Shown here in pieces: positions 334 through 55,924 of a stretch of 64,000 nucleotides of DNA. The translations under genes were made by a program, and so were the position numbers. Source of the DNA: Styela clava (Eukaryota); contig NC_135253.1 in NCBI RefSeq assembly GCF_964204865.1, positions 18,600,001-18,664,000 on the forward strand. The letters are read 5' to 3'. How positions within the stretch are numbered: position 1 is the stretch's first letter; the number at the start of each line of letters is the position of its first letter. Under the pieces are notes generated by a model that ran no database searches, had not been told where the DNA came from, and saw only the letters and a list, made by a program, of their open reading frames with translations.

Positions 334-2894
334 TGTCGCAAATGTACTATCCAATATTCGTCCGCCATGGTTTGAGACAATGATTCCGTCAACCTTGTGT
401 TCAACTGCCTTAAGTGCCATTTCCGCTTAATATAAAAATAATGAAGTGTTCTTCAAAGAATGTTGGTAATCAATATTTTATCCATTTCTGATTTCCGTAT
501 TTGCAATACAAAGTCTAGAACGTAGAATCATAACAGTAGCCTACCTGTCAGAATTCCTTTAACCACTACAGGTAAGTCCGTAATTTCTTTTAACCAATTG
601 ATACTGTCCCATTCAACACTCCCATCCATCCAGGATTGAAACGCAGCAAATGCCGACTTGTCTGGTTCCACAATCTTGGTCGATTGTTCAATATTTCTGC
701 TTCTAAAGTAGCCAGAACATAATTCCACTTAAACGAGTTTAAATGCTCAGTATCTAATTGTTGGCATTGTGATTCTGGGTCATTATCAGCGTGTGTGCAG
801 TTTACAAATTTGTGTCGGCATGTTTCGAGAGCCTGACTTTTTGTGCTTGATTCTGTGCACTTTTTGTAAACTCAAATATTTTGATTTTAGGATAGTTTCT
901 ACGTTGTGAAACCTCGCTTGTGAACCAACGTTTCCCACTCCTTAAGAAATTCCTTTCAGTGAGGAATGTTAACCGTTTTTGGAGAATAATTTTGGTATGT
1001 ACTATCACTATGATATGTATTCACGAACACATAATAAACTGCACAAAACGGGCGTACGACTTGCGCATAACATTAGCAAAGGATTCAATAAAAATGAAAT
1101 AAAAGTAGTTTTATGTACAGGGATGGTGAAATAAAAATTTCCAAAATAGACGAAGAAAGAAATTTGACAAAAAGGTTGGGAAATACGGGAAACGTTCAAC
1201 GTGAAATAAGTTTTGAAGAGCCAAGAGTAAAACCCATTGATCCTGTCCGATTTAAGTAAAAATAAATGCAGAAATAAATCTTACCTAATGGATGTATCAA
1301 AGTTAAATGGTCTTCCGTCTTCGTATCTGTGGTCTCGATTTCTAAAAACCGGTTCATCGATAGTTACAATAAATCCTTTGAATTCGTTTTTTTCAGCTCT
1401 TCTCACAAAATGCTCTGTTACGATACGATTCTATGAAATATTTGAATATCAATAAACCAAATATTTGCAAATCTAGAATAGATAGAGACTTTGAATACAT
1501 ACATATGTATAGAAAATTTTTAACCGTCATCATTTAGGGTCTAAAGCAGTGGTTCTCATACTTTTTGAGCCGCCAGAATTTTTCAGAATTTGTCTCGCGA
1601 CCAACCTCAAAAATAACTAGCTAGCAATAAGCTACAAATAACAGATAGTAAGGCGAAATTATGTTTTATCCAACAAATACGTGTATAAAGGGACCTCCAG
1701 AAATATACGCACCAAGATACTTCTGGAGCACCGTAATAAAGAATTGGTAATGAGGGACGCGTTCCGCCGTTTGAGTACCACTGGTCTGAAGATTAGACAA
1801 TCGGAATGTTGTAGTTTGATATTCACAACTATTTCTATTTCCAGTATTATGTCAAACGTCGAACAATAATAGAATGAACTGATTTTCTATAACAGAGTTT
1901 TCATTTTTAAAGAATTTCGCGCTTACTCAGTCCGTTATTGTTAGACTGTTGCGTGAATTAAAACGGGGTGTTCGCCACGCATAATTTTTTTTATTATTGC
2001 AGACTTTCAAATGTAAACACATGTTTATTAATATTTACTTTTACGATTTCCTTTTTTCATACCAACCTTGGTCAATTGAAGTTGACACCATTTTATGCAG
2101 TTTGGCACCTCAGTTGCGATCTCTTCCATCGTTTTGTTACTCCATAAACTTACTGCCATTCCTACGCCAAGTGATTCGGCGGCTTAATAAAGATCATTTT
2201 ATATTTTGTAAAACTTGCAATTAATGTTTGCGATATATAATATTGAAAGAAATATATGCTGCAGTCACTTTACCTCTTGCAGTGCAAAATTCACCTTCTG
2301 GTGCACACAGACGATGAAATGCCGTTGGTGCAATACATATTGGAAAAGGTACTTTCGAACCAATTACTTCTGTCGCACAATCCACTCTGCTAACGTTCGT
2401 TAAATTCCTGGGTCGAAATCGCCATCTGTGTATAATATTGCATTTGAAATATTTCTCCCATTATTTTTTGATTCATTTATCCAACAACCATAACCCAGCA
2501 GTATTGAAGCAATACTTTTAAATAATGTTTGAGAAATATTATTTTCATGAATTCTCGAAGTTTGCTCTAAATTTGAATTTATAAGATATAACTTGTGCAA
2601 AATTCGAGATAGCGCACCAAGTTAGTAGCCGTGTCAAGTGTTATAAGAGCAAAACAACAATATCCACCCAGCACATCAAGTATTCAAGTAAAAACAGAAG
2701 TAATAGGCCAAAAAAAAACGTCAAAATGTTATTCGCCATATTAAATCGTTAATTTCCCTTTTAAATGCTTCACAATTTTCTTTTACAGTTTCTCCTCCTA
2801 CAGCTCCTGCAGCAAAGTAGCCCCAATCATGTTGCGATAACTTTTTTCGAGCCTCTCCCTCATAATCGCTTACTGATAGCAATAAATTATCCAT
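334..2894 (-). CDS. HAO1: Hydroxyacid oxidase-like copy 1, exons 1-6 (exons 7-9 expected left of the window)
   Basis: Exons 2758-2894, 2274-2425, 2067-2182, 1285-1430, 545-702, 334-425 splice in frame ([12 protein letters not shown]...FRPRNL...IAPTAFH...VTIDEP...VVKGILT...SNHGGRILD). Intron 1 donor GG, intron 2 acceptor AAG, G151E. No frameshift seen. HAO1 versus HAO2 orthology not resolved. Confidence 0.85.
1547..1783. mobile_element. hAT (Charlie/Buster-type) MITE in intron 3, internally deleted version
   Basis: TIR CAGTGGTTCTCA...TGAGTACCACTG; 8-bp TSD GTCTAAAG/GTCTGAAG. Confidence 0.85.
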
Positions 2895-8066: not shown

Positions 8067-11000
8067 GTCTAAAGATTAGACAATCGGAATGTTGTAGTTT
8101 GATATTCACAACTATTTCTATTTCCAGTATTATGTCAAACGTCGAAAAATAATAGAATGAACTGATTTTCTATAACAGAGTTTTCTTTTTTAAGAATTTC
8201 GTGCTTATTCAGTCCGTCATTGATAAACTGTTGCTTGTATTAAGACGGGGTGTTCGCCGCGTATAAATTTTTTATTATCGCAGACTTCTAAATGTAAACA
8301 CGTGTTTATTACTATTTATTTTTACAATTTACTTTTATCATACCAACCTTAGTTAATTGAAGTTGACACCATTTTATGCAGTTTGGCACCTCAGTTGCGA
8401 TCTCTTCCATAGTTTTGTTACTCCATAAACTTACTGCCATTCCTACGCCAATTGATTCGGCGGCTGAATAAAAATCATTTTATATTGTGTTTTATTGTGT
8501 GTTATTAACTCAATCTAATGTTCGAGATATATAATATTGAAAGAAATATATGCTGCAGTCTATTTACCTCTTGCAGTACAAAATTCACCTTCTGGCGCAC
8601 ACAGACGATGAAATGCCGTTGGTGCAATACATATTGGAAAAGGTACTTTCGAACCAATTACTTCTGTCGCACAATTCACTCTGCTAACGTTCTTTAAATT
8701 CCTGGGTCGAAATCGCCATCTGTGTATAATATTGCATTTGAAATATTTTTCTCATTATTTTTTGATTCATTTATCCAACAACCATAACCTAGCAGTATTG
8801 GAGCAATACTTTTAAATAATGTTTGAGAAATATTATTTTCATGAATTCTCGAAGTTTGCTCTAAATTTGAATTCATAAGATATAACTTGTGCAAAATTCG
8901 AGATAGCGCACCAAGTTAGTAGCCGTGCAAAGTGTTATAAGAGCAAAACAACAATATCAACCCAGCACATCAAGTATTCAAGTAAAAACAGAAGTAATAG
9001 GCCAAAAAAAAAACGTCAAAATGTTATTCGCCATATTAAATCGTTAATTTCCCTTTTAAATGCTTCACAATTTTCTTTTATGGTTTCTCCTCCTACAGCT
9101 CCTGCAGCAAAGTAGCCCCAATCATGTTGCGATAACTTTTTTCGAGCCTCTCCCTCATAATCGCTTACTGATAGCAATAAATTATCCATGGACAGAAGGT
9201 TTAAACTCTTCGCCAGTAAACTAAAATTGTAAGCATGTAGGAAAAGCACACACATATATAAGGGATTTACTTGCAATTCAACTCATGAGTCGACAGAATC
9301 AAAGATTCCTGGAAACAATACAATTGATTGCTTGAATTGATTAAACCTTCTCGGTAGGATTCAAAATAGGTAACAAAAAATATCAATTGCGCGAAGTCTG
9401 GATCGTCACATACAAAATCTTTCTAATCTAAAATATACATCTTACTTCTGTCTACATTTAGAATTCAACACAACCCCTGCAATGGTTATTTGAATCAGTC
9501 GACAACTGAAATCGCTATCGCAATCGCTCAACTCATTTCGAGTCCAAATTGCAACAAAAGTCAAGTGCGATTTTTTTTATCACTGCCATTACCATATCTA
9601 CTGGTGAGTTTGCGACACGTTCTAAACAAACACCGTTGTCGCCACATTGTATGTATACACTGATTCATTCAGGAAAACCATGCTTGAAGTATAAATCCAG
9701 GGAACTAACCACACTCGTTTTAACGAATGTCACACATGGCAGTGAGAAAATTCTCCAAACTAGCTGAGCTAGTTTAAGTACCAAGTTTATTGCATTGCCG
9801 TTAAAGCCTCCAATGACGTTTGAATCATGAAAGGTTCCTGTGGTTACATCTCTTGGTGATGCTCGGAGTCTTTCAAATAAATGAGCGTTTCTGTATATGC
9901 CAGACCGTCTCTGCGCACTTAAACATACTTATATATATCTGAATAAATTTTTAATCGACTCTCTGTGACACTTTCTATTCAATCTTTTTTTTTGTGTACT
10001 GTTTTTTTCACGCGTCCTTCACCCCGAAAGACTATTTTGTCTCCTATTTTACACTGTATGCATACGTCAAGTACTTTCAGTATTGATGGAAAAGAGAATT
10101 GCTGATTGACTGACGTACGTTATGTGCAGTAGATGTAGTTTTGTTAATTAGATTTCAGTTTAACTTTTATGTTTTTCAGACTTTCTTGTCGTTTAGTTTG
10201 AAGTCCTTTTTGTTTTTGTACAGTTTGGGCAGTTTATAATGTGTCCATATATAAACATATAAATATAAACTAAAAAATATTATTAGTACAACAACAAAAA
10301 CAAAATTCTTCTTTAAGTACGACTAAATTCTTCTTGGTTGGGAAAAGTGGGTTAATTTAATTGCAAGCGTTAACTAGCTAATATTGATTAACCAATTAAC
10401 CGGCTGAACTGTCTTAATTTTAAAGACGTCACAAAAACGATATGGTTTATTTAGTGTCTTGCAGCACCGTCCGCTGAAGACAAACATCGCGAAGAAAATT
10501 TTCCCACTACCTTGTGGTTCCATTACATTTGAACCCACGTACATTTGAACCCATGGCAATCGCACCTGCATACTATTGCACCTATGGAATTTTTTTTGTT
10601 TTACGGATATTTGAACCCATACTCACCCTAACCCATGGGTTTTAGCACCCGTATATATTTCAACCCGCGGATATACGCATGGGTTCAAATGTACGGTCAC
10701 CCTACGTTGTACCACTAACTCATTGTATATATATAAGACCAATTGCTGTTTCTGTATTAAACGTATATTCCCGTATAGCCATCTACCTATCCTTAAAGAC
10801 GTTTCTAAACACTCTACGTGGATAGACCGCGTAAAACTATCTATAGAAAATTGCCCTATAATAGCGCAAAGCCATAGTTCACGCTGCCCCAGGCAACAAT
10901 TATAATAAATTCAACCATTTCGACAAATCTAATGTATGTCATTTTCATATAATTATCTTTTTTTTTATCACGAATTGGCGGCCGCGATATATTTCTGTAG

Positions 11001-14300: not shown

Positions 14301-15786
14301 ATTTACACACATATGTATAGAAAATTTTTAACCGTCATCATTTAGGGTCTAAAGCAGTGGTTCCCAAACTTTTTGAGCCGCGCCTCATTTTTAGAATTTG
14401 TCAAGTCTCGCGACCAACCTCAAAAATAACTAGCTAGCAATAAGCTACAAATAACAGATAGTAAGGCGAAATTTTGTTTTATCCAACAAATACCTGTATA
14501 AAGGGACCTCCAGAAATATGCGCACCAAGATGGCGCACAACCTGAACATAGTATGTGTGTACCGGTTGGGGTTCAGGTTGTGCGACATCTTGGTGTGCAT
14601 ACTTCTGGAGCACCGTAATAAAGAATTGTTAATGAGGGACGCGTTCCGCCGTTTGAGTACCACTGGTCTGAAGATTAGACAATCGGAATGTTGTAGTTTG
14701 AAATTCACAACTATTTCTATTTCCAGTATTATGTCAAACGTCGAAAAATAATAGAATGAACTGATTTTCTATAACAGAGTTTTCTTTTTTAAGAATTTCG
14801 TGCTTATTCAGTCCGTCATTGATAAACTGTTGCTTGTATTAAGACGGGGTGTTCGCCGCGTATAAATTTTTTATTATCGCAGACTTCTAAATGTAAACAC
14901 GTGTTTATTACTATTTATTTTTACAATTTACTTTTTTCATACCAACCTTAGTAAATTGAAGTTGACACCATTTTATGCAGTTTGGCACCTCAGTTGCGAT
15001 TTCTTCCATAGTTTTGTTACTCCATAAACTTACTGCCATTCCTACGCCAATTGATTCGGCGGCTGAATAAAAATCATTTTATATTGTGTTTTATTGTGTG
15101 TTATTAACTCAATCTAATGTTCGAGATATATAATATTGAAAGAAATATATGCTGCAGTCTATTTACCTCTTGCAGTACAAAATTCACCTTCTGGCGCACA
15201 CAGACGATGAAATGCCGTTGGTGCAATACATATTGGAAAAGGTATTTTCGAACCAATTACTTCTGTCGCACAATTCACTCTGCTAACGTTCTTTAAATTC
15301 CTGGGTCGAAATCGCCATCTGTGTATAATATTGCATTTGAAATATTTTTCCCATTATTTTTTGATTCATTTATCCAACAACCATAACCCAGCAGTATTGA
15401 AGCAATACTTTTAAATAATGTTTGAGAAATATTATTTTCATGAATTCTTGAAGTTTGCTCTAAATTTGAATTCAAAAGATATAACTTGTGCAAAATTCGA
15501 GATAGCGCACCAAGTTAGTAGCCGTGTCAAGTGTTATAAGAGCAAAACAACGATATCAACCCAGCACATCAAGTATTCAAGTAAAAACAGAAGTAATAGG
15601 CCAAAAAAAAACGTCAAAATGTTATTCGCCATATTAAATCGTTAATTTCCCTTTTAAATGCTTCACAATTTTCTTTTATAGTTTCTCCTCCTACAGCTCC
15701 TGCAGCAAAGTAGCCCCAACCATGTTGCGATAACTTTTTTCGAGCCTCTCCCTCATAATCGCTACTGATAGCAATAAATTATCCAT
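11341..15786 (-). pseudogene. HAO1: Hydroxyacid oxidase-like copy 3, frameshifted
   Basis: All 9 exons present, but 1-nt deletion in exon 1 at about 15763 (gctactg versus gcttactg). An in-frame TAA upstream blocks rescue by another start. Same lesion in copy 5. Confidence 0.85.
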
Positions 15787-17934: not shown

Positions 17935-20900
17935 TCAAAGTTTCGAGAAATATCTTGTTTCGTGAACAACTATGTCTGGTGTCGTTTGCAATTCTTCTAT
18001 TGTAGAAACTCCTGGAAAAAAAATAATATAAATGAAGCATGTTACTCGTTAGTTGCAAAATGTAGCTTACTTTGTTTCACTTTTCGGCTGGTCTGTTAGA
18101 ATTTATGGTGAGGTGTACATGATCGTGATTTTCACTCGCTATCTGGTAATTGAAATTTAGTGTGAATTTGATCTGTTTTAGTTACGGTATCACTTATTGC
18201 AAGTTGGTAATTTTGGCTGTTATTTGAAGTTTAGCATTGGAATCACTTTGGTTTTCTCAATAAAATTGTGAAAACCACCAACTAATATCATGTTTATGCA
18301 TTAGGTTAAATGCCTCCAAAGCTCTTCAACGAAGTAAAACTGGAGTTGAAAAAGAAATCTTTGTCAATAGTGTTTAATTTAAGTAACAAGTTTTATTAAA
18401 AACGTTCAAACATGTAGTACATACCGGAATAGCACCAATGTTGCATTATGTTATATTAGGTATAAAGACTACCAACTCACCAAGAAATTGCATGGTGAAG
18501 ATAAATTCGTTTTTGAGAATTTCTAGAACATTCCTCACACCTTCTTCCCCCTGAAAGGTATTGTTTCGTTTTACTATTGTCATATCAACAAAATATTCCA
18601 CATGTCTATTAGAATACTTTGCACTAATTTCAGGAAAAATTCAATTTTTGCAAATGTAATTTTACTCTAGTTTCCGAAAGGGATGATCCTAAAATAAAAT
18701 CGGCCACATGTTTCACCATCGACCATCATATATAATAATAGCAAATTGGATAACTCTCGGTATGTTGGCTCTCTTGAAAATATATGTTAAATACAGAAAT
18801 GATCTTGTTACAAACTCTGCATGCCAGTCCCCAGATTATGGGTCTTCCAACGAAAACCGCTTTTGCTCTGAGAGCGATTGCTTTTGCTACGTCTGTTCCT
18901 TTACGGATTCCTCCGTCAAAATAAACATCAACTCTGCCATTCACGGCCTTCACTACTTCTGGAAGAACGTCTATCTAAAATTAATGTCCAGTTTTAAACA
19001 TGAAACTTCATGAGTTTACATAGGAGATGCAAATCATGGATATGGACATAAACTTACATGGACGTGATAACATAACAATCATTGGTATAAAATGATCTTC
19101 AGCTTTGTTAAAAAATGTATTCAGCGGCAGAAAATTCACAAATGGGAATTATAATCTTGCTTCGATTGGACTTTACAATACAGATTTAGATTTAAACTCT
19201 CATCGCGAATGAAAAGACGTCAAAAAGAAAAATGATATGAACAACATGCGTTTCCTATTTTCTCTTTCATTACTTATCGATCTCGATCGGTAAATATGTT
19301 GATAAGTATTTGTCTGTCTGTTCGTTTGTCTGTTAGACTATTTCGTATGCTACATGATATCTCACGAAAGCGAGGTTGAATCTGCTCCAAATTTTGCATG
19401 ATCATTCATCATAGCTCGAATCGGAAGCCTATTGATTTTTCATGAAATATGTCGTATAAGCGAGTTATTAATTAATTATGGGACACGCGATGTCGCTATT
19501 GGGTCAGAGCGATAGAATCGAAACCGCAGTTTCTGTTCTGGAGGATCCCCTAAATTTCGTCGCTGCGAACGATTGTGTGCGATCGATAAGTCGGCGGTCT
19601 CCGATCGCTATTCTCGTTATTTCAGTTGATTAAAAGCAATCAATCACAATAGCTAAAAGTTATAAGACAAAAAAAACAAAAACTTGAAAGATTAAAGATT
19701 AAAACAGAGTTTGTAGTTGTCAAAACATTGTGGTAAATCTTAATACATGAAGCTGTCGAAGCCAGAACAGAACAATATCTGATATTTCTCACCCTCTATA
19801 GCAGTGGTCTTAAACTGGGTTCGATCGAACCCCTGGGGTTCGGTGGAGCTGTTCCAGGGGTGCGACGAAGGTGCTCTGAAACAGTTGCATATTATGAGAC
19901 TTTTTTATCACCCTGCATACTTATTATGCAAAAATAACTATAGTTCATGATGACTAATTACTAATGACTTGAACAATTGAATGAAACAATTAATTGGTGT
20001 TACCCTTATTCATATTCTACCGTACTAATAAAATTTAACTCAATTTTACGGATAAATCGAAGATAGGCAGTACATGAATGAATGCAAAATCAGAGCGTGT
20101 TTGAATTTCACTAGGTGATAAATTTGCGACAAGGAATAGTTTATCGCAGAGCTTTATCCGAAATTATTATGATCCATTCAGGACAACCTCGATATGGCGC
20201 CGAATTAATCCTATCTCTATTTTTGTAAAATAAAACAATTGGCAAACGATTTTATTCGCATTTCAGCGCAGTTTAAAATTTGAGAACAAATTGCTTGAAC
20301 TACCAACGTTTATGGAGTATATTATCATCTTTCGGATTTTCAAAGTTATTTTTTATCAGTTTTCGCCGGTTCACCAGCAAAACTTATACAACAAAAACCA
20401 TCTGCTCTTTCTGCCGCCAACGCCATTGTGACAAAACAATGGTTATTGATATCTAAGGTTTCATCACAATGTTCATATTCTATAACCTTGCAAGAATTAG
20501 CTTCCGCTTTATAACGTTACAGTTTGGCTTCTAATTTCAACCGTTCAGTACGATAGGGTTCGGCGGGAGCTTGCAGAATAGCGCAGGGGTTCGGCAGGCT
20601 CACAAAGATTAAGAACCACTGCTCTATAGTCTATAGAGTCTATATTCATGTATACTCACTGTCGCGAATGTACTATCCAATATTCGTCCACCATGGTTTG
20701 AGACAATGATTCCGTCAACCTTATGTTCAACTGCCTTAATTGCCATTTCCGCTTTTAATATAAAAATAATGAAAAGTTCTTTAAAAAATGTTGGTATTCA
20801 ATGTTTTATCCATTTATATTTTTCTTATTTGCAATACAAAGCCTAGAACGTATAATAACTTAGAATAGTTTAAAATCATAACCGTAGCCTACCTGTTAGA

Positions 20901-23328
20901 ATTCCTTTAACCACTACAGGTAAGTCCGTAATTTCTTTCAACCAATCGATACTGTCCCATTCAACACTTCCATTCATCCAGGATTGAAACGCAGCAAATG
21001 CCGACTGGTCAGGTTCCACAATCTTGGTCGATTGTTCAATATTTCTGCTTCTAAAGTAGCCAGAACATAATTCCACTTAAACGAGTTTAAATGCTCAGTA
21101 TCTAATTGATGGCATTGTGATTCTGGGTCATTATCAGCGTGTGTGCAGTTTACAAATTTGTGTCGGCATGTTTCGAGAGCCTGACTTTTTGTGCTCGATT
21201 TTGTGCACTTTTTGTAAACTCAAATATTTTAATTTTAGGATAGTTTCTACGTTGTGAAACCTCGCTTGTGAACCAACGTTTCCCACTCCTTAAGAAATTC
21301 CTTTCAGTGAGGAATGTTAACCGTTTTTGGAGAATAATTTTGGTATGTACTATCACTATGATATGTATTCACGAACACATAATAAACTGCACAAAACGGG
21401 CGTACGACTTGCGCATAACATTAGCAAAGGAATCAATAAAAATGAAATAAAAGTAGTTTGATGTACAGGGATGTAGAAATAAAAAATTCCAAAATAGACG
21501 AAGAAAGAAATTTGACAAAAAGGTTGGGAAATACGGGAAACGTTCAACGTGAAATAAGTTTTGAAGAGCCAAGAGTAAAATCCATTGATCCTGTCCGATT
21601 TAAGTGAAAATAAATGCAGAAATAAATCTTACCTAATGGATGTATCAAAGTTAAATGGTCTTCCGTCTTCGTATCTGTGATCACGATTTCTAAAAACCGG
21701 TTCATCGATAGTTACAATAAATCCTTTGAATCCGTTTTGTTCAGCTCTTCTCACAAAATGCTCTGTTACGATACGATTCTATGAAATATTTGAATATCAA
21801 TAAACCAAATATTTGCAAATCTAGAATAGATAGAGACTTTAAATACATACATATGTATAGAAAATTTTTAACCGTCATCATTTAGGGTCTAAAGCAGTGG
21901 TTCTCATACTTTTTGAGCCGCGAGAATTTTTTAGATTTTGTCAAGTCTCGCGACCAACCTCAAAAATAACTAGCTAGCAATAAGCTACAAATAGCAGATA
22001 GTAAGGCGAAATTATGTTTTATCCAACAAATACGTGTATAAAGGGACCTCCAGAAATATGCGCACCAAGATGGCGCACAACCTGAACATAGTATGTGTGT
22101 ACCGGCTAGGGTTCCGGTTGTGCGACATATTGGTGTGCATACTTCTGGAGCACCGTAATAAAGAATTGGTAATGAGGGACGCGTTCCGCCGTTTGAGTAC
22201 CACTGGTCTGAAGATTAGACAATCGGAATGTTGTAGTTTGATATTCACAACTATTTCTATTTCCAGTATTATGTCAAACGTCGAAAAATAATAGAATGAA
22301 CTGATTTTCTATAACAGAGTTTTCTTTTTTAAGAATTTCGTGCTTATTCAGTCCGTCATTGATAAACTGTTGCTTGTATTAAGACGGGGTGTTCGCCGCG
22401 TATAAATTTTTTATTATCGCAGTATTCTAAATGTAAACACGTGTTTATTACTATTTATTTTTACAATTTACTTTTTTCATACCAACCTTAGTTAATTGAA
22501 GTTGACACCATTTTATGCAGTTTGGCACCTCAGTTGCGATCTCTTCCATAGTTTTGTTACTCCATAAACTTACTGCCATTCCTACGCCAATTGATTCGGC
22601 GGCTGAATAAAAATCATTTCATATTGTGTTTTATTGTGTGTTATTAACTCAATCTAATGTTCGAGATATATAATATTGAAAAAAATATATGCCGCAGTCT
22701 ATTTACCTCTTGCAGTACAAAATTCACCTTCTGGCGCACACAGACGATGAAATGCCGTTGGTGCAATACATATTGGAAAAGGTACTTTCGAACCAATTAC
22801 TTCTGTCGCACAATTCACTCTGCTAACGTTCTTTAAATTCCTGGGTCGAAATCGCCATCTGTGTATAATATTGCATTTGAAATATTTTTCTCATTATTTT
22901 TTGATTCATTTATCCAACAACCATAACCCAGCAGTATTGAAGCAATACTTTTAAATAATGTTTGAGAAATATTATTTTCATGAATTCTCGAAGTTTGCTC
23001 TAAATTTGAATTCATAAGATATAACTTATGCAAAATTCGAGATAGCGCACCAAGTTAGTAGCCGTGTCAAGTGTTATAAGAGCAAAACAACAATATCCAC
23101 CCAGCACATCAAGTATTCAAGTAAAAACAGAAGTAATAGGCCAAAAAAAAAACGTCAAAATGTTATTCGCCATATTAAATCGTTAATTTCCCTTTTAAAT
23201 GCTTCACAATTTTCTTTTATAGTTTCTCCTCCTACAGCTCCTGCAGCAAAGTAGCCCCAATCATGTTGCGATAACTTTTTTCGAGCCTCTCCCTCATAAT
23301 CGCTTACTGATAGCAATAAATTATCCAT
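17935..23328 (-). CDS. HAO1: Hydroxyacid oxidase-like copy 4, full-length about 368 aa peroxisomal FMN-dependent alpha-hydroxy acid oxidase
   Basis: Exons 23192-23328, 22707-22858, 22487-22602, 21633-21778, 20893-21050, 20660-20751, 18816-18974, 18481-18550, 17935-18011 (137/152/116/146/158/92/159/70/77 nt) give one ORF ending RYFSKL*. Motifs [27 protein letters not shown] present. Needs the GG donor at intron 1. Carries ALGA>ALRA (18867-18869). Confidence 0.88.
19270..19618 (+). mobile_element. DINE-1/HINE-like non-autonomous Helentron derivative in intron 6
   Basis: 5' subTIR ACTTATCGATC with palindrome, (GTCT)n tract, 3' subTIR GATCGATAAGT followed by hairpin TCGGCGGTCTCCGA; T-rich site, no TSD. 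Equivalents at 1-112, 6378-6619, 12668-12948, 26808-27088, 33412-33760, 46020-47810 (approximate). Empty site in copy 8 (about 61420-61460). Confidence 0.75.
19802..20621. mobile_element. 820-bp non-autonomous hAT element unique to copy 4 intron 6
   Basis: Termini CAGTGGTCTTAAACT / AGATTAAGAACCACTG, subterminal GGGTTCG repeats, TSD CTCTATAG (19794-19801, 20622-20629). Empty site in other units. Confidence 0.92.
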
Positions 23329-28400: not shown

Positions 28401-29925
28401 AAGCCAAATATTTGCAAATCTAGAATAGATAGAGACTTCATTTACACACATATGTATAGAAAATTTTTAACCGTCATCATTTAGGGTCTAAAGCAGTGGT
28501 TCCCAAACTTTTTGAGCCGCGCCTCATTTTTAGAATTTGTCAAGTCTCGCGACCAACCTCAAAAATAACTAGCTAGCAATAAGCTACAAATAACAGATAG
28601 TAAGGCGAAATTTTGTTTTATCCAACAAATACCTGTATAAAGGGACCTCCAGAAATATGCGCACCAAGATGGCGCACAACCTGAACATAGTATGTGTGTA
28701 CCGGTTGGGGTTCAGGTTTTGCGACATCTTGGTGTGCATACTTCTGGAGCACCGTAATAAAGAATTGTTAATGAGGGACGCGTTCCGCCGTTTGAGTACC
28801 ACTGGTCTGAAGATTAGACAATCGGAATGTTGTAGTTTGAAATTCACAACTATTTCTATTTCCAGTATTATGTCAAACGTCGAAAAATAATAGAATGAAC
28901 TGATTTTCTATAACAGAGTTTTCTTTTTTAAGAATTTCGTGCTTATTCAGTCCGTCATTGATAAACTGTTGCTTGTATTAAGACGGGGTGTTCGCCGCGT
29001 ATAAATTTTTTATTATCGCAGACTTCTAAATGTAAACACGTGTTTATTACTATTTATTTTTACAATTTACTTTTTTCATACCAACCTTAGTTAATTGAAG
29101 TTGACACCATTTTATGCAGTTTGGCACCTCAGTTGCGATCTCTTCCATAGTTTTGTTACTCCATAAACTTACTGCCATTCCTACGCCAATTGATTCTGCG
29201 GCTGAATAAAAATCATTTTATATTGTGTTTTATTGTGTGTTATTAACTCAATCTAATGTTCGAGATATATAATATTGAAAGAAATATATGCTGCAGTCTA
29301 TTTACCTCTTGCAGTACAAAATTCACCTTCTGGCGCACACAGACGATGAAATGCCGTTGGTGCAATACATATTGGAAAAGGTATTTTCGAACCAATTACT
29401 TCTGTCGCACAATTCACTCTGCTAACGTTCTTTAAATTCCTGGGTCGAAATCGCCATCTGTGTATAATATTGCATTTGAAATATTTTTCCCATTATTTTT
29501 TGATTCATTTATCCAACAACCATAACCCAGCAGTATTGAAGCAATACTTTTAAATAATGTTTGAGAAATGTTATTTTCATGAATTCTTGAAGTTTGCTCT
29601 AAATTTGAATTCAAAAGATATAACTTGTGCAAAATTCGAGATAGCGCACCAAGTTAGTAGCCGTGTCAAGTGTTATAAGAGCAAAACAACGATATCAACC
29701 CAGCACATCAAGTATTCAAGTAAAAACAGAAGTAATAGGCCAAAAAAAAACGTCAAAATGTTATTCGCCATATTAAATCGTTAATTTCCCTTTTAAATGC
29801 TTCACAATTTTCTTTTATAGTTTCTCCTCCTACAGCTCCTGCAGCAAAGTAGCCCCAACCATGTTGCGATAACTTTTTTCGAGCCTCTCCCTCATAATCG
29901 CTACTGATAGCAATAAATTATCCAT
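25480..29925 (-). pseudogene. HAO1: Hydroxyacid oxidase-like copy 5, frameshifted, near-identical to copy 3
   Basis: Same exon-1 1-nt deletion (about 29902) and same intronic deletions as copy 3, offset 14,139 bp. Confidence 0.85.
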
Positions 29926-35900: not shown

Positions 35901-36228
35901 ATATTTTTCTGCTTTTTTCTCTGCAGTTGTATGTTTGTTCATTGAAAATTGAAGCTCGTAAACCACCAAAAATAGCTAGGGAACATTCGTTCTTTGTTTT
36001 GAGACTTCAGAGTAGACTTTGGACTATTCATTTGTCGTCGACACAGGGAATAGTGTTTATGACTGCGGACGAGAATCGTCTTTTTATTATTGTTATGCAG
36101 TTATTATTATGTTTTTTTGTTATTATGCAGTTGATTTCGGTTCTAAAGGGATATTGTTATATAAGACGTATTTGTAAGTTTATTAGGATTCTGGTAGCTA
36201 TAAATCAGACAAGGTACCGTAATGGAGA

Positions 36229-36734: not shown

Positions 36735-36764
36735 GAATCAAAACTTATGTGCAATATTGTGATG

Positions 36765-36845
36765 TTGACTTTATCAGAGACTGTGATTTTTGTTGACTTT
36801 GCCAGAGACTGTGATTTTTGTTGACTTTGTCAGAGACTGATTTTT
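36765..36845. repeat. 28-bp tandem repeat (about 3 copies) 3' of the piggyBac ORF
   Basis: GTTGACTTT(A/G)(T/C)CAGAGACTGTGATTTTT repeated. Confidence 0.8.
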
Positions 36846-41615: not shown

Positions 41616-43859
41616 TTGACGGGGTGTTCGCCACGTATAAATTTTTTATTATCGCAGACTTCTAAATGTAAACACGTGTTTATTACTATTTATTTTTACA
41701 ATTTACTTTTTTCATACCAACCTTAGTTAATTGAAGTTGACACCATTTTATGCAGTTTGGCACCTCAGTTGCGATCTCTTCCATAGTTTTGTTACTCCAT
41801 AAACTTACTGCCATTCCTACGCCAATTGATTCGGCGGCTGAATAAAAATCATTTCATATTGTGTTTTATTGTGTGTTATTAACTCAATCTAATGTTCGAG
41901 ATATATAATATTGAAAGAAATATATGCTGCAGTCTATTTACCTCTTGCAGTACAAAATTCACCTTCTGGTGCACACAGACGATGTAATGCCGTTGGTGCA
42001 ATACATATTGGAAAAGGTACTTTCGAACCAATTACTTCTGTCGCACAATTCACTCTGCTAACGTTCTTTAAATTCCTGGGTCGAAATCGCCATCTGTGTA
42101 TAATATTGCATTTGAAATATTTTTCTCATTATTTTTTGATTCATTTATCCAACAACCATAACCCAGCAGTATTGAAGCAATACTTTTAAATAATGTTTGA
42201 GAAATATTATTTTCATGAATTCTCGAAGTTTGCTCTAAATTTGAATTCATAAGATATAACTTGTGCAAAATTCGAGATAGCGCACCAAGTTAGTAGCCGT
42301 GTCAAGTGTTATAAGAGCAAAACAACAATATCCACCCAGCACATTAAGTATTCAAGTAAAAACAGAAGTAATAGGCCAAAAAAAAACGTCAAAATGTTAT
42401 TCGCCATATTAAATCGTTAATTTCCCTTTTAAATGCTTCACAATTTTCTTTTATAGTTTCTCCTCCTACAGCTCCTGCAGCAAAGTAGCCCCAATCATGT
42501 TGCGATAACTTTTTTCGAGCCTCTCCCTCATAATCGCTTACTGATAGCAATAAATTATCCATGGACAGAAGGTTTAAACTCTTCGCCAGTAAACTAAAAT
42601 TGTAAGCATGTAGGAAAAGCACACACATATATAAGGGATTTATTTGCAATTCAACTCATGAGTCGACAGAATCAAAGATTCCCGGAAACAATACAATTGA
42701 TTGCTTGAATTGATTAAACCTTAAATATCAATTGCGCGAAGTCTGGATCGTCACATACAAAATCTTTCTAATCTAAAATATACATCTTACTTCTGTCTAC
42801 ATTTAGAATTCAACACAACCCCTGCAATGGTTATTTGAATCAGTCGACAACTGAAATCGCTATCGCAATCGCGCAACTCATTTCGAGTCCAAATTGCAAC
42901 AAAAGTCAAGTGCGATTTTTTTTATCACTGCCATTACCATATCTACTGGTGAGTTTGCGACACGTTCTAAACAAACACCGTTGTCGCCACATTGTATGTA
43001 TACACTGATTCATTCAGGAAAACCATGCTTGAAGTATAAATCCAGGGAACTAACCACACTCGTTTTAACGAATGTCACACATGGCAGTGAGAAAATTCTC
43101 CAAACTAGCTGAGCTAGTTTAAGTACCAAGTTTATTGCATTGCCGTTAAAGCCTCCAATGACGTTTGAATCATGAAAGGTTCCTGTGGTTACATCTCTTG
43201 GTGATGCTCGGAGTCTTTCAAATAAATGAGCGTTTCTGTATATGCCAGACCGTCTCTGCGCACTTAAACATACTTATATATATCTGAATAAATTTTTATT
43301 CGACTCTCTGTGACACTTTCTATTCAATCTTTTTTTCGTGTACTGTTTTTTTCACGCGTCCTTCACCCCGAAAGACTATTTTGTCTCCTGTTTTACACTG
43401 TATGCATACGTTAAGTACTTTCAGTATTGATGGAAAAGAGAATTGCTGATTGACTGACGTACGTTATGTGCAGTAGATGTAGTTTTGTTAATTAGATTTC
43501 AGTTTAACTTTTATGTTTTTCAGACTTTCTTGTCGTTTAGTTTGAAGTCCTTTTTGTTTTTGTACAGTTTGGGCAGTTTATAATGTGTCCATATATAAAC
43601 ATATAAATATAAACTAAAACATATTATTAGTACAACAACAAAAACAAAATTCTTCTTTAAGTACGACTAAATTCTTCTTGGTTGGGAAAAGTGGGTTAAG
43701 TTAATTGCAAGCGTTAACTAGCTAATATTGATCAACCAATTAACCGGCTGAACTGTCTTAATTTTAAAGACGCCACAAAAACGATATGGTTTATTTAGTG
43801 TCTTGCAGCACCGTCCGCTGGAGACAAACATCGCGAAGAAAATTTTCCCACTACCTTGT

Positions 43860-48077: not shown

Positions 48078-51000
48078 ATTTCAGTTGATTAAAAGCAATC
48101 AATCACAATAGCTAAAAGTTGTGAGACAAAAAAACAAAAACTTGAAATATATATTAAAGATTAAAACAAAGTGTGTAGTTGTCGGAATATGTCAAAACAT
48201 TGTGGTAACTCTTAATACATGAATCGGTCGAAGCCAGAACAGAACAATATCTGATATTTCTCACCATCTATAGAGTCTATATTCATGTATACTCACTGTC
48301 GCGAATGTACTATCCAATATTCGTCCGCCATGGTTTGAGACAATGATTCCGTCAACTTTGTGTTCAACTGCCTTAATTGCCATTTCCGCTTTTAATATAA
48401 AAATAATGAAAAGTTCTTTAAAGAATGTTGGTATTCAATGTTTTATCCATTTATAATTTCCTTATTTGCAATACAAAGCCTAGAACGTATAATAACTTAG
48501 AATAGTTTAAAATCATAACCATAGCTTACCTGTTAGAATTCCTTTAACCACTACAGGTAAGTCCGTAATTTCTTTCAACCAATCGATACTGTCCCATTCA
48601 ACACTTCCATTCATCCAGGATTGAAACGCAGCAAATGCCGACTGGTCAGGTTCCACAATCTTGGTCGATTGTTCAATATTTCTGCTTCTAAAGTAGCCAG
48701 AACATAATTCCACTTAAACGAGTTTAAATGCTCAGTATCTAATTGATGGCATTGCGATTTTGGGTAATTATCAGCGTGTGTGCAGTTTACAAATTTGTGT
48801 CGTCATGTTTTGAGAGCCTGACTTTTTGTGCTTGATTTTGTGCACTTTTTGTAAACTCAAATATTTCGATTTTAGGATAGTTTCTACGTTGTTGAACCTT
48901 GCTTGTGAACCAACGTTTCCCACTCCTTAAGAAATTCCTTTCAGTGAGGAATGTTAACCGTTTTTGAAGAATAATTTTGGTATGTACAATCACTATGATA
49001 TGTATTCACGAACACATAATAAACTGCACAAAACGGGCGTACGACTTGCGCATAACATTAGCAAAGGATTCAATAAAAATGAAATAAAAGTAGTTTTATG
49101 TACAGGGATGGAGGAATAAAAAATTCCAAAATAGACGAAGAAAGAAATTTGACAAAAAGGTTGGGAAACACGGGAAACGTTCAACGTGAAATAAGTTTTG
49201 AAGAGCCAAGAGTAAAATCCATTGATCCTGTCCGATTTAAGTGAAAATAAATGTAGAAATAAATCTTACCTAATGGATGTATCAAAGTTAAATGGTCTTC
49301 CGTCTTCGTATCTATGGTCACGATTTCTAAAAACTGGTTCATCGATAGTTACAATAAATCCTTTGAATCCGTTTTTTTCAGCTCTTCTCACAAAATGCTC
49401 TGTTACGATACGATTCTATGAAATATTTGAATATCAATAAACCAAATATTTGCAAATCTAGAATAGATAGAGACTTTAAATACATACATAAATATAGAAA
49501 ATTTTTAACCGTCATCATTTAGGGTCTAAAGCAGTGGTTCTCAAACTTTTTGAGCCGCGCCTCATTTTTAGAATTTGTCAAGTCTCGCGACCAACCTCAA
49601 AAATAACTAGCTAGCAATAAGCTACAAATAACAGATATTAAGGCGAAATTATGTTTTATTCAACAAATACGTGTATAAAGGGACCTCCAGAAATATGCGC
49701 ACCAAGATGGCGACAACCTGAAGATAGTATGTGTGTACCGGTTAGGGTTCAGGTTGTGCGACATCTTGGTACTTCTGGAGCACCGTAATAAAGAATTGGT
49801 AATGAGGGACGCGTTCCGCCGTTTGAGTACCACTGGTCTGAAGATTATACAATCGGAATGTTGTAGTTTGATATTCACAACTATTTCTATTTCCAGTATT
49901 ATGTCAAATTTGGTATGGTTGAAAAATAATAGAATGAACTGATTTTCTATAACAGAGTTTTCTTTTTTAAAGAATTTCGTTCTTATTCAGTCCTTCATTG
50001 TTAAACTGTTGCTTGTATTAAAACGGGGTGTTCGCCACGTATAATTTTTTTTATTATTGCAGACTTTCAAATGTAAACACATGTTTATTACTATTTACTT
50101 TTACTTTTTTCATACCAACCTTAGTCAATTGAAGTTGACACCATTTTATGCAGTTTGGCACCTCAGTTGCGATCTCTTCCATCGTTTTGTTACTCCATAA
50201 ACTTACTGCCATTCCTACGCCAAGTGATTCGGCGGCTGAAAAAAAAATCATTTTATATTGTGTTTTATTGTGTGATATTAACTCAATCTAATGTTCGAGA
50301 TATATAATATTGAAAGAAATATATGCTGCAGTCTATTTACCTCTTGCAGTACAAAATTCACCTTCTGGTGCACACAGACGATGAAATGCCGTTGGTGCAA
50401 TACATATTGGAAAAGGTACTTTCGAACCAATTACTTCTGTCGAGCAATCCACTCTGCTAACGTTCGTTAAATTCCTGGGTCGAAATCGCCATCTGTGTAT
50501 AATATTGCATTTGAAATATTTTTCCCATTATTTTTTGATTCATTTATCCAACAACCATAACCCAGCAGTATTGAAGCAATACTTTTAAATAATGTTTGAG
50601 AAATATTATTTCCATGAATTCTTGAAGTTTGCTCTAAATTTGAATTCAAAAGATATTACTTGTGCAAAATTCGAGATAGCGCACCAAGTTGGTAGCCGTG
50701 CAAAGTGTTATAAGAGCAAAACAACAATATCCACCCAGCACATCAAGTATTCAAGTAAAAACAGAAGTAATAGGCCAAAAAAAAACGTCAAAATATTATT
50801 CGCCATATTAAATCGTTAATTTCCCTTTTAAATGCTTCACAATTTTCTTTTATAGTTTCTCCTCCTACAGCTCCTGCAGCAAAGTAGCCCCAATCATGTT
50901 GCGATAACTTTTTTCGAGCCTCTCCCTCATAATCGCTTACTGATAGCAATAAATTATCCATGGACAGAAGGTTTAAACTCTTCGCCAGTAAACTAAAATT

Positions 51001-53869: not shown

Positions 53870-55924
53870 TTTGTCATTATTAGTGTTCATCTGTTGCTTA
53901 ATATTTTATAATGGAGAATAAAACATTCTTGTATAAAGTTCTATGTAGAAGAAGGGAGGGGGTGGGGAATGTGACGACCCATATTTTTAGATTTATAACA
54001 CCATTATTTGATTTTACTGTTAGATTCTGTATTATAATGTTCGAGACACCAAGGCGCTGTAGCACCGTCCGTCAGTCTTTTGTTTGTATTGAGTTGTTTT
54101 CAGCTCATTTCGTAAATAATTAGTTAGTTAGCTGGTTAGCTATATATATATACCAGATTTTAGGGTTTCTCTCCAAATTTCAGTTCTTTTATTGTATATA
54201 TATATTTATGTATAATGTTTTTTCTTACGATGTTCATACCGGGTGTTTGTTAATTTTATTGCATCCTTTCTGTTCTATCGAGTTCATGGGAATATTTGGT
54301 TGTATTAAGACTGTTAGGTTATACATGAGATTAAAATAGCATTAATTGAAGTGAATATTGAGAAAAAGATTGACATCAGACCAAATTGGAAGATATTTCA
54401 AGCCGGGAAAAGTCGTAGGCTACATAGATTGACGGTACGTTTCACACTTTCCTGACGTAATCAAATATTGATTAGGGCTGACCTTGACAATCATGATAAA
54501 ATGAAGAGACTCGGCTTGCCCTGTAAGCATGAGGGATAGCAGCCTATAAGTAATTACGTTATAACACGAGCCAAGTATATTCATTTTATTGTGAGTGTCG
54601 AGCCCTAATCAATATTTAAACGGATAATAAAGGATTGTCGTATGGGATCTGCTACTATCAAGTTGTGGAAAGTTATTATTATGTCCATTGTTATGTTGAG
54701 GATGATTTAGAAACACTCAGTGTTTTAAACACGCAAAGTGCTTCTTATTTGTGTAATCTGCAATGTCACTGCTAAATTTTAAATAACATTTGTGTCACTT
54801 GTATTCCTACTTGTTTGCATTAGTCGATGACTGCATGTAATCTTTTATAGTTTGAACGTCTTTCAAGGTTTTAGCTGTAATGCAAATACGTGATACTTGA
54901 AAGAAAACTTTTCACTGGCATGTGTGACTTCCGTAAAATCCAGTGTTAAGCTCCCTTGGTTTGTACTTAAAACATAGTTTTCCTTAATTAATGTCGTTGT
55001 GTGCATACGATGCGGCGACAGTGGTGTTTGATCAAAGCGTGTCGCAAACTCCCAAGTATAGATATATATGGTACTGGTAGCGCCATAGTCGGCCACTGTA
55101 AGGGTTATGTAGAATTCTTGAAAGAGGGAATGACTGTAGTAAGCTATGTTTTTAGATTAGAAAGATTTTGTATGTAATGATTCAGACTTGCACGAGTGAT
55201 ATTTTACGACCTATTTTTGAATATTTGTAGTTACCGAGGCTGATGGCAATGTCTCAGGAAGGTCGCCAGCCAGCCTTAGTTCACTGTTTGAATCTAAATT
55301 GAATTGCGTACGACGTAAGGAATCTGACAGTAATCCATTTATAAAATCTCCCTTGCCCGTATCCTACTGATGCCAGATTGATTTCGCACCTTTTAAACGT
55401 TCATAGTTGTTCCAAAATAACGGTATGGGATTAGTATGTAGTATATAGGGAGAAATATTTATATATTCTATTTTCGGAATATGAAAATTTGTTTTTGAAA
55501 CACCACTCATTCATATATATATTACATCCGTTCGACCGTGAACAAATCGTCTGCAAAGAAAGTATTATAGATGAGTCGTGCTTGATTCACTTCTCACACT
55601 CTTGTCGCTTTCAGTCTGGCAAAAAGATAAATTGTAAAACCGATCAATTGTATGGTTTCCTCAAATCTAGGATTCTGTCGGCTCGTTAGATAATTGCACG
55701 TGCTTACACTTTCCTGCTTGCTTACAATTTCAGTTAACTCGCAAATATTTAAAACATTTTAGTCCATGGAGAACTTATTGCTATCAGTAAGCCATTATGA
55801 GGAAGAAGCTCGAAGAAAGTTATCGCAACATGATTTGGGCTATTTTGCTTTTGCTGCAGGAGCAAGAGAAACCATGAAAGAAAACTGTGAAGCATTTAAA
55901 AGGAAAAATAATCATTGTTTAGCT

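What the first reader, a model, noticed from the sequence alone, without database searches (positions are those of the whole stretch)
23185..23200. Intron 1 appears to use non-canonical GG-AG (array) and GA-AG (paralog) splice sites
Seen: exon 2 starts CACAG|A TGG CGA TTT and needs a phase-2 donor. Homology (AFKR/WRFRPR; 137-nt exon 1 as recalled for HAO1) places it at TTTAAAAG|GGAAAT in all seven array copies (2756-2757, 9051-9052, 23190-23191, 42424-42425, 50823-50824 and others) and AAAAG|GAAAAA in copy 8 (55903-55904). Read-through hits TGA about 12 codons later, and the only downstream phase-2 GC would create TGA. Known: GA/GG donors are very rare in animals but reported as frequent in Eurytemora affinis and Oikopleura. 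Inference: +2 differs between paralogs (G vs A) while AG|G_AAA is kept, suggesting a spliceosome tolerant of purines at +2, here at an ancestral intron position. Standard predictors would miscall these genes.
Basis: partly seen in the sequence, partly recalled or inferred. Interest (0 to 1): 0.78.

Follow-up and report, generated by a model that had tools for sequence, protein, structure and literature searches.

The report
Working GG-AG intron in sea-squirt oxidase genes
In a cluster of sea-squirt (Styela clava) hydroxyacid-oxidase genes the first intron begins with GG (GA in relatives) instead of the near-universal GT, yet RNA data show it is still cut out at the right place, a rare but already known kind of exception that public gene models already include.

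Summary
All seven minus-strand array copies read AAAAG|GGAAAT and the inverted copy reads AAAAG|GAAAAA, after a 137-nt, phase-2 exon 1.

RNA-like contigs from 2 of 3 runs, from two studies, join 23192 directly to 22858. A DNA run lacks this joint. The skipped stretch is GG..AG. The other seven introns are GT-AG.

Nine paralogs elsewhere in the genome have GT at the same site, one has GG and one has GA. In the tree the GA genes sit inside the GG group, which suggests GT→GG→GA. dN/dS within the group is 0.2-0.34.

Intron 1 is also retained far more than other introns. I take it for a weak, leaky U2-type donor.

U1 (30 of 30 copies read) and U6 (20 of 20) have standard recognition sequences. Nothing here shows a special spliceosome.

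RefSeq models on this assembly already use the junction, so "predictors would miscall" fails for that pipeline. GA-AG use was not tested with reads.

An earlier scan note on this array concerned a Tyr→Gln change, not splicing.

Verdict: a real, ordinary-rare case and a new member of a known kind, of modest interest.

The parts
17935..23328 (-). Array copy 4: intact nine-exon HAO1-like gene (368 codons from the ATG at 23328, C-terminus SKL)
   Evidence: Exon map read; frame checked. All nine exon peptides are found exactly in RefSeq model P0222. RNA-contig joints fall at every predicted exon end.
23192..23328 (-). Exon 1 of copy 4 (137 nt, ends in phase 2 with ...TTTAAAAG)
   Evidence: Contigs X1 record 6 and X3 record 29 end exactly at 23192.
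23190..23191 (-). Non-canonical donor dinucleotide GG (context AAG|GGAAAT)
   Evidence: Joint 22858->23192 has ends CT..CC on the plus strand, which is GG..AG on the minus strand.
22859..23191 (-). Intron 1 of copy 4 (333 nt), removed in RNA but also often retained
   Evidence: The joint skips 333 bases (X1 contig depth 708, X3 78.8). Contigs cover the whole intron (X1 record 5 at depth 120; X3 records 27 and 28 at about 63; X2 at 9-21).
22859..22860 (-). Acceptor AG (…TATACACAG|ATGGCG)
22707..22858 (-). Exon 2 of copy 4 (152 nt)
2756..2757 (-). GG donor of copy 1. The gene continues left of the window and looks intact; it equals RefSeq model P0121.
9051..9052 (-). GG donor of copy 2 (copy damaged: no exon 6 hit, 1-nt gap in exon 5)
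15649..15650 (-). GG donor of copy 3 (copy damaged: 1-nt deletion in exon 1)
29788..29789 (-). GG donor of copy 5 (copy damaged: 1-nt deletion in exon 1)
42424..42425 (-). GG donor of copy 6 (copy damaged: exons 2-5 duplicated internally, 34200-42093)
50823..50824 (-). GG donor of copy 7 (copy damaged: intron-7 donor reads TC at 45565-45566)
   Evidence: RefSeq model P0221 reads through that donor.
55766..55902 (+). Exon 1 of the inverted copy 8 (137 nt)
55903..55904 (+). Donor GA of copy 8 (context AAG|GAAAAA). Intron 1 is 55903-56674 and exon 2 starts at 56675.
   Evidence: RefSeq model P0227 carries the exon 1-exon 2 junction. No reads were laid here.
58212..58213 (+). Copy 8 intron-5 donor reads AT, not GT, so copy 8 is broken in this assembly. 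Its intron-6 acceptor at 61733-61734 reads AA.
   Evidence: RefSeq model P0227 reads through and ends after 235 aa.

Best explanation
Intron 1 of these HAO1-like (FMN-dependent 2-hydroxyacid oxidase) genes of Styela clava is an ordinary, ancestral, phase-2 U2-type intron. Its donor lost the T at +2: GT became GG in the ancestor of a small gene subfamily, and GG then became GA in one branch. The intron is still removed at exactly the old junction. Shown: the sequence, the RNA junction for the GG form, GT at the same site in paralogs, standard U1 and U6 sequences, and purifying selection within the subfamily. Inferred: what remains of the site is enough for the normal U1/U6 machinery. That is G at +1, exonic AAG at -3 to -1, A at +3 and +4 (and T at +6 in the GG form), with no competing in-frame GT nearby. 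Splicing is accurate but inefficient, which is why intron-1-retaining RNA is abundant. It is a fixed 'leaky' +2 splice-site variant tolerated in a redundant, amplified gene family. It is not evidence of a re-tooled spliceosome.
For:: joint 22858->23192 (GG..AG) in X1 (contig depth 708) and X3 (78.8), which are two studies, and absent from DNA run X10. All other joints are GT..AG at the predicted exon ends; the two odd ones trace to SNPs of sister copies. Bins 21100-21499 have depth 0 in X1-X3, so the intron-1 cover (X1 120, X3 about 63, X2 9-21) is RNA, not DNA carry-over. Retention of introns 7 and 8 in X1 is only 9 and 3; of 15 paralogs outside the window, 9 have GT at the same site and phase, 4 have no intron there, 1 has GG and 1 has GA. 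The intron starts look homologous (GTAAAGTAA / GGAAATTAA / GAAAAATAA); the NJ tree places the C10 GG gene outside (array + GA genes) in 498 of 500 bootstraps, so GG is the older state; dN/dS is 0.18-0.34 within the GG/GA clade at dS 0.24-0.44; copy 4, and the C13 GA gene, are intact with seven GT-AG introns. RefSeq models carry ...EAFK-R-WRFRP... for copies 1, 2-like, 4, 7 and 8 and for the C13 gene. U1 is ATACTTACCTG in 30 of 30 copies read and U6 has ACAGAGA in 20 of 20. Papers: Robertson 2017 (PMC5714493, text part 1) reports that GA/GG donors have obligate exonic AG and almost always A at +3, as here. Passages of PMC12805630 report human +2T>G/A variants that form working GG and GA donors.
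Against: The runs are labelled only 'RNA? (a guess)', and the data are assembled contigs, not reads. The shorter side of the joint is 30 letters in X1 and 28 in X3, just under the tool's 31-letter rule for counting a bridge. X2 shows only the unspliced form around intron 1. The cut has a 2-base ambiguity ('both 2'), so GG..CA or AG..AC fit the letters equally well; only homology with the GT paralogs picks GG..AG. Contigs cannot say which array copy is expressed, and at least 5 of the 8 window copies are damaged. The RefSeq model of the C10 GG paralog does not use GG; it reads on to a GT 17 nt downstream and skips exon 2. GA-AG use was not tested with reads. Depth per contig is a poor measure, so 'inefficient' is only semi-quantitative. 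Gene conversion among paralogs could distort the tree (exon 1 of copy 8 versus the C13 gene has dS 0.08, against 0.24 overall).
Confidence: 0.85

Rival explanations
1. Styela clava, or ascidians more widely, has a spliceosome generally tolerant of purines at +2, as proposed for Oikopleura and Eurytemora. This intron would then be one of many GA/GG-AG introns.
For: Two different purines (G, A) at +2 are kept in related genes under purifying selection. Tunicate larvaceans use many non-GT donors (PMC7072748 passages; PMC13326754 introduction). In Fritillaria the U1 5' end is also strictly conserved, so standard snRNA sequences do not exclude this.
Against: U1 (30 of 30) and U6 (20 of 20) are standard. 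In the six genes mapped, all other working introns are GT-AG. Intron 1 is retained much more than its neighbours, as expected of a poor site. The C10 GG gene's public model prefers a nearby GT. The Ciona KH gene set lists 112,989 GT-AG, 556 GC-AG and 40 AT-AC introns and no GA/GG class, though only those classes were considered (PMC2760879 passages). The scan's notes on this genome hold no other GA/GG donor.
Confidence: 0.08
2. The spliced RNA comes from an allele or copy that has GT at the donor and is absent from this assembly. The GG copies themselves are never spliced.
For: RNA and DNA runs are from other samples than the assembly may be. Sister copies do differ by SNPs seen in the contigs. 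One 'other letter' of X3 record 28 (23069-23221) is not itemised in the output.
Against: All 7 array copies and the C10 paralog have GG, and 2 genes have GA. DNA-run contig X10 record 14 spans 23099-23899 with 0 other letters and no branch at the donor. No difference at 23190-23191 is listed in any run (38 rows not shown). The older RefSeq release also models the junction (P0225, P0226) and reads 'KREITDSG' through GG in the C10 gene (P0125). dN/dS < 0.35 within the clade.
Confidence: 0.04
3. The junction is an artefact: reverse-transcriptase template switching, or a de Bruijn assembly jump at the shared AG.
For: Two bases of microhomology ('both 2'). Only contigs were seen, with anchors of 28-30 letters.
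Against: The same exact junction appears in two studies. In X1 its contig depth (708) exceeds that of the retained form (120). It restores the reading frame and the conserved ...AFKRWRF... motif, and coincides to the base with the GT-AG junction of nine paralogs. Two bases is very short for a template switch.
Confidence: 0.02
4. The true termini are AG..AC or GG..CA (a shifted cut, reminiscent of larvacean non-canonical classes), or the intron is U12-type.
For: The 2-base ambiguity of the joint. U12 snRNA genes exist in the genome (2 hits over the cut-off).
Against: Paralogs with an unambiguous AG|GT...CAG| at the same position. No [AG]TATCCT donor and no TCCTTRAY branch site in intron 1 of copy 4 or copy 8.
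Confidence: 0.02
5. The whole cluster is a set of amplified pseudogenes sharing an inactivating donor lesion.
For: At least 5 of the 8 window copies carry other lesions. Intron 1 is often retained.
Against: The spliced junction is present in RNA. Copies 1 and 4 and the C13 GA gene are intact. dN/dS is 0.18-0.34.
Confidence: 0.03

Closest known systems
GA and GG donors of the copepod Eurytemora affinis (Robertson 2017, PMC5714493) and GA-AG introns of Oikopleura dioica (Frey & Pucker 2020, PMC7072748)
   Same: G at +1 and a purine at +2. Exonic AG before the cut and A at +3, which those papers describe as obligate or near-obligate. AG acceptor. RNA-supported.
   Different: Those species have them in about 3-12% of introns, and in the copepod mostly in recently gained introns. 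Here it is one old intron in one gene subfamily, derived from a GT donor. No genome-wide excess has been shown.
Leaky human +2T>G / +2T>A splice variants (ATM c.1898+2T>G, c.6347+2T>G/A; PMC12805630 passages) and the natural GA donor of FGFR1-3 (Brackenridge 2003; not read, cited)
   Same: A standard U2 spliceosome uses a GG or GA donor at the normal junction, with only partial yield of correctly spliced RNA.
   Different: The human cases are disease variants or alternative sites. As quoted, the FGFR site depends on a GT six bases upstream. Here the nearest upstream GT is 15 bases away. The state is also fixed and has persisted across gene duplications (dS up to 0.44).
Non-canonical introns of the larvacean Fritillaria borealis (Soo et al. 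2026, PMC13326754)
   Same: A tunicate; U2-type machinery; unchanged U1 5' end.
   Different: In Fritillaria fewer than 10% of introns follow GT/AG, and duplicated U2AF subunits and altered snRNA m6A are involved. Nothing of that scale or kind is seen here.

Membership tests
U2-type intron with non-canonical G-purine donor (GG-AG / GA-AG) | G at +1 and A or G, not T or C, at +2 in the genomic DNA | tested here: met
   GG in 7 of 7 array copies and GA in copy 8. A DNA-run contig agrees with the assembly over 23099-23899.
U2-type intron with non-canonical G-purine donor (GG-AG / GA-AG) | Spliced junction at that donor seen in RNA and absent from DNA | tested here: met
   GG form: joint 22858->23192 in X1 and X3, not in X2, not in DNA run X10. 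GA form: not tested with reads; only RefSeq models carry it.
U2-type intron with non-canonical G-purine donor (GG-AG / GA-AG) | AG acceptor | tested here: inconclusive
   The letters allow GG..AG, GG..CA or AG..AC ('both 2'). Homology with nine GT-AG paralogs favours AG.
U2-type intron with non-canonical G-purine donor (GG-AG / GA-AG) | Exonic AG at -2/-1 and A at +3 (context reported for such donors, PMC5714493) | tested here: met
   AAG|GGAAAT and AAG|GAAAAA. The paper's text was read.
U2-type intron with non-canonical G-purine donor (GG-AG / GA-AG) | Removal by the major (U1/U2/U6) spliceosome | not testable with these tools
   Only indirect evidence: no U12-type motifs and standard U1 and U6 genes.
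U12-type (minor) intron | Donor [AG]TATCCTT and branch site TCCTTRAY near the 3' end | tested here: not met
   Neither motif occurs in intron 1 of copy 4 or copy 8. U12 snRNA genes do exist in the genome.
FMN-dependent 2-hydroxyacid oxidase (Pfam PF01070, HAO1-like) | Match to PF01070 over the protein | tested here: met
   RefSeq models that contain all nine exon peptides of copies 1 and 4 exactly belong to cluster P0121, which carries a precomputed PF01070 hit and the source name '2-Hydroxyacid oxidase 1-like [Styela clava]'. I ran no Pfam scan of my own.
FMN-dependent 2-hydroxyacid oxidase (Pfam PF01070, HAO1-like) | Peroxisomal targeting tripeptide at the C-terminus (SKL; motif recalled, not from a call) | tested here: met
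   Copy 4, copy 8 and the C10 and C13 genes end in SKL; copy 1 ends in LKL.

The most novel reading that the evidence does not exclude
Relaxed recognition of the +2 base is not confined to larvaceans but extends, at low level, to ascidians. Under this reading Styela clava carries many RNA-supported GA/GG-AG introns that evidence-free predictors miss, and this HAO subfamily is simply the first one noticed. A related possibility: the seven-fold tandem amplification was favoured because it compensates for the poor yield of a leaky donor.
Probability: 0.08. Interest if true: 0.6.

Novelty: new member of a known kind. Interest (0 to 1): 0.33.

Why it matters
This is a clean natural example of a donor that lost its +2 T and stayed in use. 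It kept working through at least two gene duplications and one further G-to-A change, under purifying selection, in an animal whose snRNAs look standard. That makes it a useful test sequence for what makes GG/GA donors workable, and a reminder for annotators of tunicate genomes. Its practical weight is limited. GG-AG and GA-AG introns are already documented elsewhere, the public RefSeq models already contain this junction, and nothing here shows a genome-wide phenomenon.

Tried and rejected
- **A second exon 1 in copy 8.** The ninth pattern hit (56215, GCATTTCAAAGTAAAA) looked like a second exon 1 with a GT donor. Read in context it is unrelated sequence.

- **Joint 18008->18478 (ends AG..AG) as a second odd intron.** It is an alignment shift. 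Sister copies read CAG|GTG where copy 4 reads CAG|GAG, so intron 8 is GT-AG.

- **Joint 18550->18818 with two extra letters.** It reflects the AAA codon of sister copies. I briefly suspected a TC-AG intron, because copy 7 reads AAA|TCATGT. Copies 2, 3, 5 and 6 read AAA|GTATGT or AAA|GTTTGT and account for the RNA, so copy 7 is simply damaged.

- **Changed snRNAs.** I found no U1 variant with a changed 5' end (30 of the 42 hits were read), no changed U6 box (20 of 48 read), and no U12-type motifs.

- **Upstream GTGAAG as an FGFR-like helper.** It lies 15 nt before the cut, pairs poorly with U1, and is present in the GT paralogs too. I did not pursue it.

- **The 7-mer ATGGCGA.** It occurs both inside intron 1 (23165-23171) and at the start of exon 2 in array copies, but not in copy 8. 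I treated it as coincidence.

- **Earlier scan notes.** Word searches for other GA/GG donors in this genome found none. 'donor splice' gave 19 notes, 8 shown, none about GA/GG.

- **Literature.** No paper holds both 'Styela clava' and 'hydroxyacid oxidase'. No paper holds 'ascidian' together with GA-donor or GG-donor terms. In one search the three listed papers that mention Styela clava are about minor introns or introners, judged by title and abstract only.

- **Not done.** A genome-wide tally of donors was not possible, because no annotation or further read calls were available. Supplements are closed; File S1 of PMC5714493 and File S1 of PMC7072748 (per-species counts) might bear on how common GA/GG donors are in tunicates.
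Full report
**What is there**

The window (G000 contig C4:18600001-18664000) holds a tandem array of HAO1-like genes on the minus strand, plus one inverted copy. I mapped copy 4 by eye.
- Exon 1: 23328-23192
- Exon 2: 22858-22707
- Exon 3: 22602-22487
- Exon 4: 21778-21633
- Exon 5: 21050-20893
- Exon 6: 20751-20660
- Exon 7: 18974-18816
- Exon 8: 18550-18481
- Exon 9: 18011-17935 (ends ...SKL, then TGA)

The frame is open throughout. Introns 2-8 begin with GT and end with AG. Intron 1 begins with GG (23191-23190) and ends with AG.

The motif GCATTTAAAAG|GGAAA is identical in all seven array copies. The inverted copy 8 has GCATTTAAAAG|GAAAA (9 matches against 0.66 expected; the ninth is a chance match). 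Exon 1 is 137 nt in six of the eight copies and 136 nt in copies 3 and 5, which carry a 1-nt deletion.

**State of the copies**
- Copy 4 is intact.
- Copy 1 runs off the window. Its remaining exons, in L057, look intact and end in LKL.
- Copy 2 lacks an exon 6 hit and has a 1-nt gap in exon 5.
- Copies 3 and 5 share the exon 1 deletion.
- Copy 6 has exons 2-5 duplicated internally.
- Copy 7 has TC in place of the intron-7 donor.
- Copy 8 has AT at the intron-5 donor and AA at the intron-6 acceptor.

So at least five of eight copies are damaged. This agrees with earlier scan note s1-817525.

**RNA evidence**

The look-up of sequencing runs listed nine runs labelled 'RNA? (a guess)' that hold 18-28% of the sampled words, roughly the exonic share. 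It also listed four runs holding about 60%, which I take for DNA.

I laid X1, X2 and X3 (three studies) and X10 on 17900-23899. X1-X3 behave as RNA. They show joints at my predicted exon ends, X10 shows none of these, and bins 21100-21499 (intron 4) have depth 0 in all three.

The joint 22858->23192 skips 333 bases with ends CT..CC on the plus strand, which is GG..AG on the gene strand.
- X1: one contig, depth 708, shorter side 30 letters.
- X3: one contig, depth 78.8, shorter side 28 letters.
- X2 and X10: absent.

Contigs X1 record 6 and X3 record 29 stop exactly at 23192, as expected where spliced and unspliced paths part.

Limits of this evidence:
- These are assembled contigs, not reads.
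- The anchors are just under the tool's 31-letter bridging rule.
- 'both 2' means the cut could also be written GG..CA or AG..AC.
- The expressed copy cannot be identified.

Two other joints looked non-canonical and are not. The joint 18008->18478 and the joint 18550->18818 with two extra letters are explained by single-base differences between copy 4 and its sisters.

**Retention**

Whole-intron-1 contigs are present in all three RNA-like runs.
- X1: record 5, 22833-23221, depth 120.
- X3: records 27 and 28, depth about 63.
- X2: records 21 and 22, depth 9-16. In X2 only the unspliced form was assembled.

For comparison, in X1 intron 7 is covered at depth 9, intron 8 at depth 3 and intron 4 at depth 0. 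High cover inside introns 3 and 6 comes from high-copy repeats; depths reach 206,035 and 74,436 in the DNA run. Contig depth is crude, but intron 1 looks much less efficiently removed than its neighbours.

**Comparative evidence**

The exon 1 peptide finds 23 places in the genome, 15 of them outside the window. At the homologous codon:
- Nine paralogs have a phase-2 intron starting with GT (L009, L012-L015, L017-L019, L021).
- Four have no intron there. These are single-exon ORFs (L016, L020, L022, L023).
- One has GG (L006, on C10).
- One has GA (L011, on C13).

The intron starts are visibly homologous: GTAAAGTAA in L009, GGAAATTAA in the array and GAAAAATAA in copy 8 and L011.

I fetched 10 kb around three of these genes and mapped exons one by one.
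- The C13 GA gene (L055) is intact, with an ATG, seven GT-AG introns and SKL.
- The C10 GG gene (L054) is intact apart from ACG in place of the start codon.
- The nearest GT paralog (L056) is intact.

Nei-Gojobori estimates, pooled over whole codons exon by exon, give dN/dS of 0.18-0.34 within the GG/GA clade at dS 0.24-0.44. dS to L056 is saturated at about 2. A neighbour-joining tree on 358 codon columns places L054 (GG) outside a clade of the array (GG) plus copy 8 and L055 (GA) in 498 of 500 bootstraps. Copy 8 and L055 pair in 380 of 500.

The most parsimonious history is GT to GG once, then GG to GA once. The non-GT state has therefore persisted through duplications while the coding sequence stayed under constraint. 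Gene conversion could blur this history (exon 1 values).

**Machinery**
- U1: 42 hits over the Rfam cut-off. All 30 copies I read begin ATACTTACCTG.
- U6: 48 hits. All 20 copies read contain ACAGAGA.
- U12: two hits over the cut-off. However, intron 1 has neither a U12-type donor nor a U12-type branch motif.

Counting standard U1 pairing by hand (my inference), AAG|GGAAAT pairs at 6 of 9 positions, AAG|GAAAAA at 5 of 9, and the GT paralog's AAG|GTAAAG at 7 of 9.

**Public annotation**

A search with the intronless paralog ORF and then with database protein P0026 showed that the organism is Styela clava, and that RefSeq has models on contigs of exactly the lengths of C4, C13 and C10. Exon-peptide substring checks give these matches:
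- P0121 (XP_077968164.1) equals copy 1.
- P0222 equals copy 4, with a start 22 codons upstream.
- P0221 equals copy 7 and reads through its broken intron-7 donor.
- P0224 is a truncated copy-2-like model.
- P0227 equals copy 8, truncated at its AT donor.
- P0230, P0231 and P0232 are three isoforms of the C13 GA gene.

All of these carry ...NCEAFK-R-WRFRP..., so they use the GG-AG or GA-AG junction. The older release does too (P0225, P0226, P0122, P0123). The exception is the C10 GG gene. Its models (P0125, P0236) read ...EAFKREITDSGS-AESHG..., which means they run on to a GT 17 nt downstream and skip exon 2.

So the junction is already in public models, though I found no paper on it.

**Context from papers**
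- Robertson 2017 (PMC5714493, text part 1): GA/GG donors make up about 12% of introns in sampled E. affinis genes, with obligate exonic AG and almost always A at +3. He quotes Parada 2014 for 14 GA and 32 GG donors among 222,263 human introns.
- Frey & Pucker 2020 (PMC7072748, passages): GA-AG outliers in E. affinis and O. dioica.
- Satou 2008 (PMC2760879, passages): the Ciona KH set has 112,989 GT-AG, 556 GC-AG and 40 AT-AC introns, and only those classes were tabulated.
- Soo 2026 (PMC13326754; abstract, introduction and passages): Fritillaria non-canonical splicing with an unchanged U1 5' end.
- Llinares-Burguet 2025 (PMC12805630, passages): some human +2T>G/A variants make working GG/GA donors at reduced yield.

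**Verdict**

The best reading is an old GT donor that mutated at +2 and remains a weak but accurate U2-type site. It is tolerated in a redundant, partly decaying gene family. A species-wide tolerant spliceosome is neither shown nor excluded. This is a new member of a known, rare kind, of modest interest.

Noticed in passing
window 34200-42093: Copy 6 carries an internal duplication of about 4.1 kb that repeats exons 2-5. The 28-bp tandem repeat appears at both 36763 and 40884.
   Followed up: partly
window 45565-45566 (minus strand): Copy 7's intron-7 donor reads TC, where its sisters read GT. RefSeq model P0221 reads through it into a novel C-terminus.
   Followed up: yes
window 58212-58213 and 61733-61734 (plus strand): Copy 8 has AT at the intron-5 donor and AA at the intron-6 acceptor in this assembly. 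Older RefSeq models of the same gene (P0122) join these exons normally, so this may be an allele-specific break.
   Followed up: partly
window 21900-22100 and 19300-19500: Very high-copy repeats sit inside introns 3 and 6. Summed contig depth reaches 206,035 and 74,436 in the DNA run and is also high in the RNA-like runs. I did not identify them.
   Followed up: no
window 23329-23899 and beyond: RNA-like contigs run without a break from exon 1 to at least 23765 (X1) and past 23899 (X3 record 29, 1160 nt). RefSeq starts copy 4 at an in-frame ATG 22 codons upstream (P0222). A conserved ...TTACAATTT[TC]AG just upstream of the ATG in copies 4 and 8 could be a trans-splice or 5'UTR acceptor.
   Followed up: no
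L054 (G000:C10:20474500-20484499), about 558-720: The C10 GG paralog has ACG where the others have ATG, and a GT 17 nt after the GG site. RefSeq's model uses that GT, skips exon 2 and starts further upstream. This is a natural contrast for how a GG donor fares against a nearby GT.
   Followed up: partly
L016, L020, L022, L023: Four HAO paralogs are single-exon ORFs of 378-397 aa, with no intron at the exon 1/2 site. They may be retrogenes or an old intronless lineage.
   Followed up: no
G000:C1:19.46-19.60 Mb; G000:C5:2.5-4.7 Mb: snRNA genes form large arrays. At least 47 U6 copies lie within about 140 kb on C1, and most of the 42 U1 hits lie on C5, with some on C10.
   Followed up: no
window 23165-23171 versus 22852-22858: The 7-mer ATGGCGA at the start of exon 2 also occurs 20 nt into intron 1 in array copies, but not in copy 8.
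   Followed up: no
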